Source: Octopus sinensis (taxonomy: Eukaryota). From it: a DNA stretch of 64,000 nt. This document shows, piece after piece, positions 58,612-60,297 of this stretch (its first letter is position 1; the number at the start of each line of letters is the position of its first letter). The stretch spans positions 18,414,001-18,478,000 of the forward strand of contig NC_043007.1 in NCBI RefSeq assembly GCF_006345805.1, read 5' to 3'. The position numbers and the translations under genes were made by a program. The notes below the pieces were generated by a model, which ran no database searches, was not told the origin of the DNA, and worked only from the letters and a program-made list of their open reading frames with translations.

Positions 58612-58680
58612 CTGATAATAACAGAAAGAAGCCAGTAATAACATCTACTACGACAGAAATTAATGAAGATTATATAGTTG
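58612..58680 (+). CDS. Stalk exon copy 1 (ADNNRKKPVITSTTTEINEDYIV), phase 1 to 1
   Basis: ttattttgcAG acceptor, ttg|GTATGT donor, 69 nt symmetric exon, Thr-rich. Confidence 0.75.
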
Positions 58681-59445
58681 GTATGTAGCAGTTACTTTAA
58701 TTAACTGCTTTGACATCTGAGGGAATTTGTTGTAAATATCTTATTTTGTATTCGGTTGTCCAGAAAGTTCATACTGGTTCTTAAAGGAAAGAAAAAGGTC
58801 AATAATTACTTGCCTTTACATTTTTAATCAACCAAATATGAACCACATTGTTGACGTCATCATTGTTATCGTCATCGTTGTCATCGTCGTCATCGTTGTC
58901 ATCGTCGTCATCGTTGTCATCGTCGTCATCGTCATCATTGTCGTAATTGTTGGCATCATCATTGTCATTGTCATCGTCATCATCGTTGTCGTTGTCATCA
59001 TCATAATTGTTGGCATCGTCGTCGTCATCGTCATTGTTGTCGTCGTCATCATCATTGTTGTCGTAATTGTTGGCATCATCATCATTGTCGTCATCATCGT
59101 CATTGTCATCGTAATTGTTGGCATCGTCGTTATCATCATCATCGTCGTCATTGTCATCATCATCGTCATTGTCGTCATAATTGTTGGCATCATTGTCATC
59201 ATTATCATCGTTGGCAAAATTTTTAGCATAACAGGCAAAATACTTCACAGCATTTAATCCATCCTTATGTTCTGAGTTCAAATTCCGTTGAGGTCGGCTT
59301 TGCCATTCATTTTTTGGGGTCAGTGAAATAAGTACCAGTCATGCACTAGGGTCGATGTAATCGACTAGCCCCCTTCCTCAAAAATTTCAGGCCTTGTGCA
59401 TATTGTTGAAAGGATTATCATTATTATTTTACGTTTATTTTGCAG

Positions 59446-59514
59446 CTGATAATAACAGAAAGAAGCCAGTAATAACATCTACTACGACAGAAATTAATGA
59501 AAATTATATAGTTG
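59446..59514 (+). CDS. Stalk exon copy 2 (ADNNRKKPVITSTTTEINENYIV)
   Basis: Same splice sites as copy 1; one substitution (GAT to AAT, D to N). Confidence 0.7.
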
Positions 59515-60228
59515 GTATGTAACAGCTACTTTAATTAATTGCTTTGACATCTGAGGGAATTTGTTGTAAATATCTTATTTTGTATTCGGTTGTCCAGAAA
59601 GTTCATACTGGTTCTTAAAGGAAAGAAAAAGGTCAATAATTACTTGCCTTTACATTTTTAATCAACCAAATATGAACCACATTGTTGACGTCATCATTGT
59701 TATCGTCGTCATCGTCGTCATTGTCGTAATTGTTGGCATCATCATTGTCATTGTCATCGTCATCATCGTTGTCGTTGTCATCATCATAATTGTTGGCATC
59801 GTCGTCGTCATCGTCATTGTTGTCGTCGTCATCATCATTGTTGTCGTAATTGTTGGCATCATCATCATTGTCGTCATCATCGTCATTGTCATCGTAATTG
59901 TTGGCATCGTCGTTATCATCATCATCGTCGTCATTGTCATCATCATCGTCATTGTCGTCATAATTGTTGGCATCATTGTCATCATTATCATCGTTGGCAA
60001 AATTTTTAGCATAACAGGCAAAATACTTCACAGCATTTAATCCATCCTTATGTTCTGAGTTCAAATTCCATTGAGATTGGCTTTGTCTTTCATCTTTTTG
60101 GGGTCAGTGAAATAAGTACCAGTCATGCACTAGGGTCGATGTAATCGACAAACCCCCTTCCCAAAAATTTCAGGCCTTGTGCGTATTGTTGAAAGGATTA
60201 TCATTATTATTTTACGTTTATTTTGCAG

Positions 60229-60297
60229 CTGATAATAACAGAAAGAAGCCAGTAATAACATCTACTACGACAGAAATTAATGAAAATTATATAGTTG
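60229..60297 (+). CDS. Stalk exon copy 3 (ADNNRKKPVITSTTTEINENYIV)
   Basis: Intact AG and GTATGT; exon sequence matches copy 2. Confidence 0.7.

What the first reader, a model, noticed from the sequence alone, without database searches (positions are those of the whole stretch)
58612..60297. Stalk exon tandemly triplicated with all three copies splice-competent
Seen: a 69-nt phase 1-1 exon encoding a Thr-rich linker occurs three times (period 834 and 783 bp). All three keep AG and GTATGT and an open frame. Copy 1 differs by D to N, and flanking intron sequence differs by scattered substitutions, which argues against an assembly stutter. Units 1 and 2 end about 100 bp inside the mariner left end and rejoin the trinucleotide array at an attgt(c/t)g microhomology, so duplication post-dates the mariner insertion. 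Inference: inclusion of 1-3 copies (304, 327 or 350 aa in the distal-start model) or copy-number polymorphism could tune how far the ligand-binding domain sits from the membrane, or the number of RKK shedding sites.
Basis: partly seen in the sequence, partly recalled or inferred. Interest (0 to 1): 0.7.

Follow-up and report, generated by a model that had tools for sequence, protein, structure and literature searches.

The report
Octopus membrane-protein linker exon, tandemly triplicated
A 0.8-kb stretch of an uncharacterised, octopus-only membrane-protein gene, carrying one small in-frame exon, is really present three times in Octopus sinensis and twice in its sister species; it is a young tandem exon duplication of a well-known kind that public gene models already show, with no evidence of a special function.

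Summary
Three 69-nt phase 1-1 exons lie at 58612-58680, 59446-59514 and 60229-60297. Each has an AG acceptor, a GTATGT donor and an open frame, and they sit in 834/783-bp units that differ by 2-4%.

The window is Octopus sinensis assembly GCA_006345805.1, gene LOC115217258. The gene encodes an orphan single-pass membrane protein with no Pfam domain and no relative outside Octopus.

RefSeq already lists isoform X1 (349 aa, all three copies), X2 (304 aa, copy 1 only) and X3 (295 aa).

An independent long-read assembly of O. vulgaris has two copies, joined by the identical 27-nt mariner-to-array junction. The first duplication therefore predates the roughly 2.5-My species split and is not an assembly stutter. 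O. bimaculoides has the empty mariner site, so the order was mariner insertion, then duplication, then a change between two and three units.

The units are mosaics, which points to unequal exchange or gene conversion. The intact splice sites and frames are uninformative at this young age. The gene is weakly constrained (dN/dS about 0.73), and other kb-scale tandem duplications in its introns also differ between the species.

The "ligand-binding domain", "shedding site" and height-tuning ideas have no support. This is a new member of a known kind, of modest interest.

The parts
3461..3562 (+). Exon 1 of LOC115217258 (ATG, signal-peptide-like N-terminus)
   Evidence: 100% tblastn match to aa 1-34 of XP_036363056.1. 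GT donor.
50129..50159 (+). Exon 2 (DDYNCTFGKL)
   Evidence: AG/GT sites
52074..52187 (+). Exon 3
53264..53364 (+). Exon 4
57186..57264 (+). Exon 5 (last exon of the Cys-containing ectodomain; ends in phase 1)
57963..58376 (.). (GAY)n trinucleotide/minisatellite array of unit 1. The parental breakpoint marker ACGTCATCATTGT starts at 58153.
58380..58584 (.). SINE-like interspersed repeat, copy in unit 1. It ends 28 nt before the exon's acceptor.
   Evidence: At least 8 further copies in the window at 72-83% identity and many in the O. bimaculoides locus. No tRNA or Rfam match.
58612..58680 (+). Linker exon copy 1 (6a), D variant
   Evidence: It is the copy used in RefSeq X1, X2 and X3.
58751..58853 (.). 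Partial mariner end (about 100 nt) closing unit 1. The junction 27-mer starts at 58840.
58854..59209 (.). (GAY)n array of unit 2
59213..59418 (.). SINE-like repeat, copy in unit 2
59446..59514 (+). Linker exon copy 2 (6b), N variant
   Evidence: included in RefSeq X1
59585..59687 (.). Partial mariner end closing unit 2. The junction 27-mer starts at 59674.
59688..59992 (.). (GAY)n array of unit 3. It is identical to the unit 2 array except for a 51-nt indel.
59996..60201 (.). SINE-like repeat, copy in unit 3. It shares three states with the last unit of O. vulgaris.
60229..60297 (+). Linker exon copy 3 (6c), N variant
   Evidence: included in RefSeq X1
60368..60930 (-). Internally deleted mariner remnant with inverted terminal repeats and a TA target duplication (60366-7 and 60931-2). 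The minus strand encodes the transposase C-terminus.
   Evidence: Inverted repeat I9; translation; E = 2e-21 to Mos1 transposase; empty site in O. bimaculoides.
60985..61128 (+). Exon 7: juxtamembrane segment plus transmembrane helix. It contains an internal 27-nt near-duplication (QPANTVYLP / STNTVNFLK).
   Evidence: The AF2 helix at 177-219 is the only confident segment.
62902..63176 (+). Exon 8: cytoplasmic tail and stop codon

Best explanation
**What it is.** This is a real, evolutionarily young intragenic tandem duplication. The gene is LOC115217258 of Octopus sinensis, an Octopus-restricted, weakly constrained, single-pass type I membrane protein of unknown function.

**Inferred order of events.**
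1. A mariner inserted at a TA in the roughly 124-nt intron between a 69-nt juxtamembrane exon and the transmembrane exon. This happened after the split from O. bimaculoides.
2. A non-homologous, microhomology-type join (TTGT[C/T]G) formed between about nt 100 of that mariner and a (GAY)n array upstream of the exon. It duplicated a 0.75-0.83-kb unit made of array, SINE-like repeat, exon, 70 nt of intron and the mariner end. This happened before O. sinensis and O. vulgaris split.
3. Homologous unequal exchange and gene conversion between units then changed unit number and shuffled variants. O. sinensis now has three units and O. vulgaris has two. A gain in the sinensis lineage is the more parsimonious reading.

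**Effect on the protein.** The exon is symmetric (phase 1-1, 23 codons). Every unit keeps the same acceptor region and donor. Each included copy therefore adds 23 residues in frame to the predicted unstructured extracellular segment next to the membrane. Public models include all copies (X1, and both O. vulgaris models) or only the first (X2, X3).

**Most likely significance.** A near-neutral lengthening of a tolerant linker. It is one of several kb-scale tandem duplications in this repeat-rich gene.

**Shown versus inferred.** The structure, the shared junction, the empty site and the in-frame products are shown. The exchange mechanisms, the direction of the two-versus-three change and neutrality are inferred.
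For: - Three units and their anatomy.
- The window equals GCA_006345805.1, and the gene and isoforms X1/X2/X3 are identified.
- The canonical model reproduces X2 exactly, and X1 apart from one junction.
- O. vulgaris (ONT-based assembly with Iso-Seq/RNA-seq/PASA annotation, PMC10700109) has two units, both included in its models. It carries the identical junction GAACCACATTGTTGACGTCATCATTGT, which differs from both mariner parents.
- Empty mariner site in O. bimaculoides.
- Mosaic sharing of variants: S3 matches V2 in the SINE-like repeat; S2 matches S3 in the array and exon; the D/N states plus a linked site are shared across species; two sites are fixed per species in all units..
- Mariner identity.
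- Orphan status and lack of domains.
- dN/dS of 0.73 against O. bimaculoides over 208 codons.
- Two other intronic tandem duplications at 98-99% identity also differ in copy number from O. vulgaris.
- Tandem exon duplication is common (about 10% of animal genes, as quoted in PMC9013439).
Against: - No raw reads or transcripts could be inspected.
- The third unit rests on one PacBio/Hi-C assembly.
- The unit 2 and unit 3 arrays are identical over 308 nt. This fits a very recent event but is also what a mis-assembly could give.
- The X1 first junction (EDYT|A) needs a TA..TG intron, and X3 needs GT..AC. Parts of the RefSeq models therefore do not follow from this genome by canonical splicing.
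- The mosaic pattern does not fit a single unequal crossover.
- Neutrality is argued from weak constraint and context. It is not demonstrated.
- The O. bimaculoides region has assembly gaps exactly where exon 5 and the linker exon should lie, so the ancestral single-copy state is inferred, not seen.
Confidence: 0.8

Rival explanations
1. Copy number, or regulated inclusion of one to three copies, is used to set how far the ectodomain stands from the membrane or how many cleavage sites it has, and it is maintained by selection.
For: RefSeq lists both a three-copy and a one-copy isoform. Copy number differs between sister species. All copies are intact. The segment is predicted to be unstructured (low confidence).
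Against: - Intactness is expected by chance at 2-4% divergence, and the exon shows no excess conservation over its flanks (p = 0.31).
- The only exonic difference is non-synonymous.
- The gene evolves at dN/dS of about 0.73.
- There is no known domain or ligand.
- Neighbouring purely intronic tandem repeats show the same between-species copy-number change.
- The one-copy isoforms may instead reflect alleles. In O. vulgaris the D-type copy is the last one, so a D-to-TM junction read would mimic skipping of copies 2 and 3 on this reference.
- RKK-P is not a canonical proprotein-convertase site (own knowledge).
Confidence: 0.1
2. The third unit is an assembly artefact, such as a false duplication or a collapsed or expanded repeat in the PacBio assembly. 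On this view O. sinensis really has two units, like O. vulgaris.
For: Only one assembly shows three units. The unit 2 and unit 3 arrays match at all 308 aligned bases, apart from a 51-nt indel. RefSeq X1 has a non-canonical first junction.
Against: - The window contains no Ns.
- The whole array is about 2.4 kb, which is well within single long reads.
- Unit 2 is not a copy of either neighbour. It matches unit 1 at six sites in the SINE-like repeat, matches unit 3 in the exon region, and has four private changes.
- Unit 2 begins and ends with the junction, which no unit of a two-unit allele does.
- The D, N, N order differs from the N, D order in O. vulgaris.
Confidence: 0.06
3. Only one copy is ever spliced into mRNA. 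The extra copies are silent pseudo-exons, and the multi-copy proteins (X1 and the O. vulgaris models) are products of gene predictors.
For: I could not see the transcript evidence behind any model. X2, which is exactly the canonical one-copy product, carries the lowest accession number of the three isoforms.
Against: The acceptor regions (at least 26 nt) and the donors (GTATGTA) are identical in all copies. The introns between copies are 765 and 714 nt, so the spliceosome has no obvious basis to ignore two of the three. The O. vulgaris annotation was built with Iso-Seq, RNA-seq junctions and PASA, and both of its models carry both copies.
Confidence: 0.1

Closest known systems
Tandem exon duplication in animal genes (Kondrashov & Koonin 2001 and Letunic et al. 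2002, both cited from my own knowledge; reviewed in PMC9013439)
   Same: Adjacent, near-identical exons created by duplication of a genomic segment inside a gene. The exon is symmetric in phase and a multiple of 3 nt long, so copies can be added in frame. The splice sites are duplicated along with the exon.
   Different: The classic, well-studied cases are old and are spliced in a mutually exclusive way. Here the copies are very young (2-4% divergence). They are additive in the annotated models (three in X1, two in O. vulgaris), and copy number differs between sister species.
Human haptoglobin Hp2 and the three-copy 'Johnson' allele (own knowledge, not tested here)
   Same: A first non-homologous join between two different intronic sites makes an in-frame internal duplication of about 1.7 kb. 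Homologous unequal crossing-over between the two units then makes a three-unit allele. This is the same two-step logic as inferred here.
   Different: Hp2 duplicates two exons of a folded domain and has known phenotypic effects. Here one 23-residue linker exon of an uncharacterised protein is involved, and nothing is known about polymorphism or effect.
Length-variable stalks or necks of membrane receptors, such as the 23-residue (69-bp) neck repeats of L-SIGN/CLEC4M and the GP1BA or PSGL-1 mucin-region VNTRs (own knowledge)
   Same: A repeated short extracellular juxtamembrane module whose number varies and changes the length of the stalk. The unit size of 23 residues matches that of CLEC4M by coincidence.
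   Different: Those repeats lie inside a single exon, are population polymorphisms with measured functional consequences, and form defined structures (a coiled-coil neck or a mucin rod). Here each repeat is a separate exon within a 0.8-kb unit. There is no sequence similarity, and function and polymorphism are untested.

Membership tests
Tandem exon duplication (additive, in-frame) | Two or more adjacent exons of one gene with clear sequence homology | tested here: met
   Three 69-nt exons that are 98.6-100% identical, 834 and 783 bp apart
Tandem exon duplication (additive, in-frame) | Same intron phase on both sides and a length divisible by 3, so any number of copies keeps the frame | tested here: met
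   Phase 1-1, 69 nt. The 1-, 2- and 3-copy CDSs are 915, 984 and 1053 nt, each with a single terminal stop.
Tandem exon duplication (additive, in-frame) | Each copy retains functional-looking splice sites | tested here: met
   AG and GTATGT at all three copies, with identical polypyrimidine tract and candidate branch region
Tandem exon duplication (additive, in-frame) | Copies are present together in mature mRNA | tested here: inconclusive
   RefSeq X1 (three copies) and two O. vulgaris models (two copies) exist, but the underlying reads could not be examined. The X1 first junction is non-canonical.
Mutually exclusive exon cluster | Exactly one exon of the cluster is included per transcript | tested here: not met
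   Annotated products carry three copies (X1) or two (O. vulgaris). The frame does not enforce exclusivity.
Coding copy-number polymorphism (VNTR-like) of a receptor stalk | Different unit numbers segregate within a population | not testable with these tools
   Only one assembly per species was available. Only a between-species difference (3 versus 2) is seen.
Assembly false duplication | Copies are (near-)identical or haplotype-like, adjoin gaps, and are absent from independent assemblies | tested here: not met
   No Ns; units are 1.9-3.8% apart with a mosaic phylogenetic signal. The junction is shared with the O. vulgaris assembly. This holds for the duplication as such. The third unit has no independent confirmation.
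Mariner (Tc1/mariner) transposon remnant | Terminal inverted repeats, a TA target-site duplication, and a DD34D-type transposase coding remnant | tested here: met
   31-nt terminal inverted repeats, 87% complementary (I9). TA on both sides. C-terminal 78 residues match Mos1 at E = 2e-21. Empty TA site in O. bimaculoides. The catalytic residues were not examined because the element is internally deleted.

The most novel reading that the evidence does not exclude
The number of 23-residue juxtamembrane modules is polymorphic within Octopus populations and/or varied by regulated exon inclusion (1, 2 or 3). This would give an octopus-specific surface protein a selectable, rapidly evolving stalk length. 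It would be a separate-exon analogue of the neck-repeat polymorphisms of vertebrate lectin receptors, caught within about 2.5 My of its origin.
Probability: 0.1. Interest if true: 0.5.

Novelty: new member of a known kind. Interest (0 to 1): 0.3.

Why it matters
This is a clean, datable example of how a gene gains in-frame protein modules. The steps are a transposon insertion, a microhomology join between that transposon and a simple-sequence array, and then homologous exchange that changes unit number between sister species separated by about 2.5 My. Both breakpoints, the empty site and the intermediate two-unit state are preserved.

It is useful as a teaching case. It is also a caution for annotation: paralogous exon variants and allelic arrangements can masquerade as exon skipping.

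It does not open a new question. The protein is an uncharacterised, weakly constrained, lineage-restricted gene, and the multi-copy products are already in public databases.

Tried and rejected
- **Naming the ectodomain.** Pfam gave only sub-threshold hits on the TM segment. An exhaustive HMMER search of 1.84 billion representatives found nothing outside the query's own cluster except a spurious tail hit to a bacterial repeat protein. The single-sequence AlphaFold model had pLDDT 44.5, so I did not run a fold search.
- **O. bimaculoides as the single-copy outgroup.** The locus (L001) has N-gaps exactly between exon 4 and the TM exon. Exon 5 and the linker exon were not found. The older protein version was not on record. 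Only the empty mariner site could be used.
- **Looking up hypothetical spliced isoforms directly.** Isoform X3 is not on record as a gene product.
- **Origin of the linker exon from another exon of the gene.** Local alignment scores are no better than shuffles, so this was rejected.
- **The SINE-like repeat as a tRNA-derived or Rfam element.** ARAGORN and Rfam gave nothing meaningful.
- **Expression information.** The LOC identifier is absent from the searchable literature and from the supplements of two octopus transcriptome papers.
- **A single unequal crossover to explain unit 2.** The variant mosaic alternates in resemblance along unit 2: unit 3-like array, unit 1-like SINE, unit 3-like exon, unit 1-like end. 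That does not fit a single unequal crossover, so additional conversion has to be assumed.
- **Canonical splice sites for the odd RefSeq junctions.** A brute-force search found only TA..TG for X1 and GT..AC for X3.
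Full report
**Observation.** An exact and approximate search of both strands finds the 69-nt sequence three times, all on the + strand, at 58612-58680, 59446-59514 and 60229-60297. Each copy is preceded by AG and followed by GTATGT. Only one frame is open; it reads DNNRKKPVITSTTTEINE(D/N)YIV, with two bases completing a codon at the 5' end and one base left over at the 3' end (phase 1-1). Copy 1 has D and copies 2 and 3 have N. The repeat finder and a three-way alignment show that whole units of 834 and 783 bp are repeated. 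Over the 475 non-array bases the units differ by 9, 13 and 18 substitutions (1.9%, 2.7% and 3.8%) plus indels.

**Anatomy of a unit.** From left to right a unit has five parts.
- A (GAY)n trinucleotide/minisatellite array.
- An interspersed SINE-like repeat of about 205 nt. It has at least eight further copies in the window at 72-83% identity and many in the O. bimaculoides locus. It has no tRNA or Rfam match.
- 27 nt of polypyrimidine tract ending in AG, followed by the exon.
- 70 nt of intron.
- The first roughly 100 nt of a mariner.

Only the third unit continues into the rest of the mariner, at 60368-60930. That element has 31-nt terminal inverted repeats (pair I9) and TA on both sides. 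Its minus strand encodes the last 78 residues of a mariner transposase (E = 2e-21 to Mos1). Units 1 and 2 break off after ...GAACCACATTGTTG and resume with ACGTCATCATTGT..., a marker that occurs once in the first array, at 58153. The two parents share TTGT(C/T)G at the breakpoint.

**The gene.** A peptide assembled from exon 5, one linker exon, the transmembrane exon and the last exon retrieved Octopus sinensis LOC115217258 isoform X3 and the O. bimaculoides protein LOC106876703. All exons of X3 map to the window at 100% identity, with exon 1 at 3461-3562, about 46 kb upstream of exon 2. The RefSeq/GenBank locus fetched for the longest isoform is the window itself shifted by 1460 bases (GCA_006345805.1, CM016869.1). 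It is therefore not independent evidence.

The eight-exon model with canonical sites is:

| Exon | Coordinates |
|---|---|
| e1 | 3461-3562 |
| e2 | 50129-50159 |
| e3 | 52074-52187 |
| e4 | 53264-53364 |
| e5 | 57186-57264 |
| e6a / e6b / e6c | 58612-58680 / 59446-59514 / 60229-60297 |
| e7 | 60985-61128 |
| e8 | 62902-63176 |

This model gives 304, 327 or 350 aa with one, two or three linker exons.

The protein has a hydrophobic N-terminus and a Cys-containing ectodomain of about 120 residues. The linker follows, then one transmembrane helix, which is the only confidently modelled part, and a tail of about 90 residues. It has no Pfam domain. It has no relative outside Octopus in an exhaustive search of 1.84 billion cluster representatives. 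Against O. bimaculoides, 208 alignable codons give dN/dS of about 0.73. It is a lineage-restricted, weakly constrained gene, and nothing identifies a "ligand-binding domain".

**What public annotation already says.** A second search with the three-copy model retrieved a cluster of four proteins.

| Protein | Species | Length | Linker copies |
|---|---|---|---|
| X1 (XP_036363055.1) | O. sinensis | 349 aa | all three |
| X2 (XP_029642759.1) | O. sinensis | 304 aa | copy 1 only |
| CAI9729687.1 | O. vulgaris | 327 aa | two |
| CAI9729686.1 | O. vulgaris | 363 aa (alternative first exon) | two |

X2 is exactly my one-copy model. X1 equals my three-copy model except that EDYIV|A reads EDYT|A at the first junction. 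A brute-force search shows that this junction requires a TA..TG intron. X3's loss of QPANTVYLP at the start of exon 7 requires a GT..AC intron. I could not explain these two junctions. They suggest that the RefSeq models were shaped by transcripts that do not match this genome exactly.

Nobody appears to have described the duplication itself.

**Independent test: the sister species.** The O. vulgaris locus (GCA_951406725.2, an ONT-based assembly; no Ns in the 72-kb locus) has two linker exons, at L003 65919-65987 (N) and 66663-66731 (D). They are 744 bp apart and each has AG and GTATGT.
- The two units are joined by the same 27-nt string, GAACCACATTGTTGACGTCATCATTGT, that joins the O. sinensis units. 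That string differs from the mariner parent of either species (...CCATTTTGT[T/G]G...). A single origin before the split, about 2.5 My ago (PMC10700109), is by far the simplest reading. It rules out an assembly stutter for the duplication as such.
- The first O. vulgaris unit has lost most of its SINE-like repeat.
- The last unit has the repeat and the full mariner remnant.
- The O. vulgaris annotation used Iso-Seq, RNA-seq junctions, PASA and EVM, and both of its models include both copies.

**Outgroup.** In O. bimaculoides the joined flanks of the mariner align continuously across a single TA (CTTATTTTGTA|TTATTCATG), so the site is empty there. The mariner therefore arrived after that split, about 34 My ago. 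The assembly has N-gaps exactly where exon 5 and the linker exon should lie; the sequence resumes about 15 nt into the intron that follows the linker exon. The ancestral copy number could therefore not be read.

**History of the units.** Variant sharing is mosaic.
- In the SINE-like repeat, three sites group the last units of the two species (S3 with V2) against S1 and S2.
- In the array, S2 and S3 are identical over 308 nt apart from one 51-nt indel.
- Around the exon, S2 and S3 share two derived states.
- The D/N site and a linked intronic site group S1 with V2, and S2 and S3 with V1.
- Two sites are fixed per species in all units.

Excluding breakpoint columns, S2 and S3 differ by about 1% in the exon-proximal 290 nt. 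That is less than the 1.9% divergence of the unique flank between species. The most economical account is a two-unit ancestor, a gain of one unit in the sinensis lineage by unequal homologous exchange, and short gene-conversion tracts. A single crossover does not reproduce the pattern, and a three-unit ancestor with loss in O. vulgaris is not excluded.

**Are three intact copies meaningful?** No. At 2-4% divergence, the few positions that would destroy a splice site or create a stop are expected to be untouched. Among the five units, 1 of 69 exon positions varies, against 12 of about 220 flanking positions (Fisher p = 0.31). The one exonic change is non-synonymous. Two other kb-scale tandem duplications in intron 1 of the same gene (17.6-21.2 kb and 10.5-13.4 kb; 98-99% identity) also have more copies here than in O. 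vulgaris. Unit-number change is the local norm, and this instance happens to include an exon.

**Mechanism and effect.** The exon is symmetric, and the acceptor and donor contexts are identical in every unit. The default expectation is that all copies are spliced in, each adding 23 residues to the extracellular juxtamembrane segment. That is what X1 and the O. vulgaris models show.

The one-copy isoforms X2 and X3 may be genuine skipping of copies 2 and 3. There is an alternative. In O. vulgaris the D-type exon is the one next to the TM exon, so transcripts from an allele with that arrangement, or with one unit, would align to this reference as "copy 1 joined to exon 7" and mimic skipping. Annotation cannot separate these readings.

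The proposals that length tunes receptor height, or that RKK motifs are shedding sites, have no support. RKK followed by Pro is not a canonical convertase site; this rests on my own knowledge.

**Comparison with known systems.** This is a tandem exon duplication, a phenomenon reported for about 10% of animal genes (PMC9013439). It is of the additive rather than the mutually exclusive type.
- The two-step origin, a non-homologous join followed by unequal homologous exchange from two to three units, parallels human haptoglobin Hp2 and its three-copy allele (own knowledge).
- Functionally it resembles variable stalks such as the 23-residue neck repeats of CLEC4M. It shares neither sequence nor exon organisation with them, and neither polymorphism nor effect has been shown here.

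**Verdict.** The functional inference is unsupported. This is a new member of a known kind whose products are already in public databases. Interest is modest (0.3). Its value lies mainly in being an unusually well-preserved, datable example of exon gain, and in the caution it gives for interpreting isoforms across near-identical exons.

Noticed in passing
window 60985-61011 (start of exon 7); L001 10043: Exon 7 carries an internal 27-nt near-duplication (QPANTVYLP followed by STNTVNFLK). It is present in O. sinensis and O. vulgaris and absent from O. bimaculoides (AFTNNVNLPKNK). RefSeq isoform X3 lacks exactly these 27 nt, which on this genome needs a GT..AC intron. This may be an indel polymorphism rather than splicing.
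   Followed up: partly
window 58674/58675 and 59442/59443: RefSeq isoform X1 reads EDYT|ADNN at the first linker junction instead of EDYIV|ADNN. The only way to obtain this from the window is a TA..TG intron (58675-59442, or to 60225). Unexplained.
   Followed up: partly
window 17637-21207: A tandem triplication of a unit of about 1.07-1.37 kb in intron 1 (91-100% identity, mostly 98-99%). O. vulgaris has only about 1.5 copies.
   Followed up: partly
window ~10460-13450: A tandem duplication (about 2.3 copies, period about 1309-1319 bp, 98-99% identity) in intron 1, containing (TG/CA)- and (ATAC)-rich arrays. Copy number also differs from O. vulgaris.
   Followed up: partly
window 52349-53200: A large degenerate trinucleotide/9-15-nt-period array, about 850 bp long, between exons 3 and 4 (intron 3). 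It reads as poly-Ile/Val/Asn in translation.
   Followed up: no
window 55380-55620 and 56220-56470: A pair of long inverted repeats (about 240 nt) flanking about 600 bp in intron 4. It looks like a non-autonomous DNA transposon with long terminal inverted repeats.
   Followed up: no
L003 65840-65870 (O. vulgaris): The first O. vulgaris unit has lost about 165 nt of its SINE-like repeat; the array runs directly into ...TTTCAGGCCTTGTGC. It keeps the 60 nt upstream of the exon, so the acceptor region is intact.
   Followed up: yes
L001 8419-9079 and 9845-9944 (O. bimaculoides): Assembly gaps coincide with the positions expected for exon 5 and the linker exon. The annotation there splits the gene into two loci: a 143-aa N-terminal product and the 145-aa LOC106876703.
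   Followed up: partly
window 3461-50129: Intron 1 is about 46.5 kb and packed with SINE-like repeats, microsatellites and at least one other mariner-like ORF fragment (minus strand, 24564-24896). O. vulgaris has an alternative first exon (CAI9729686.1) that I did not map in the window.
   Followed up: no
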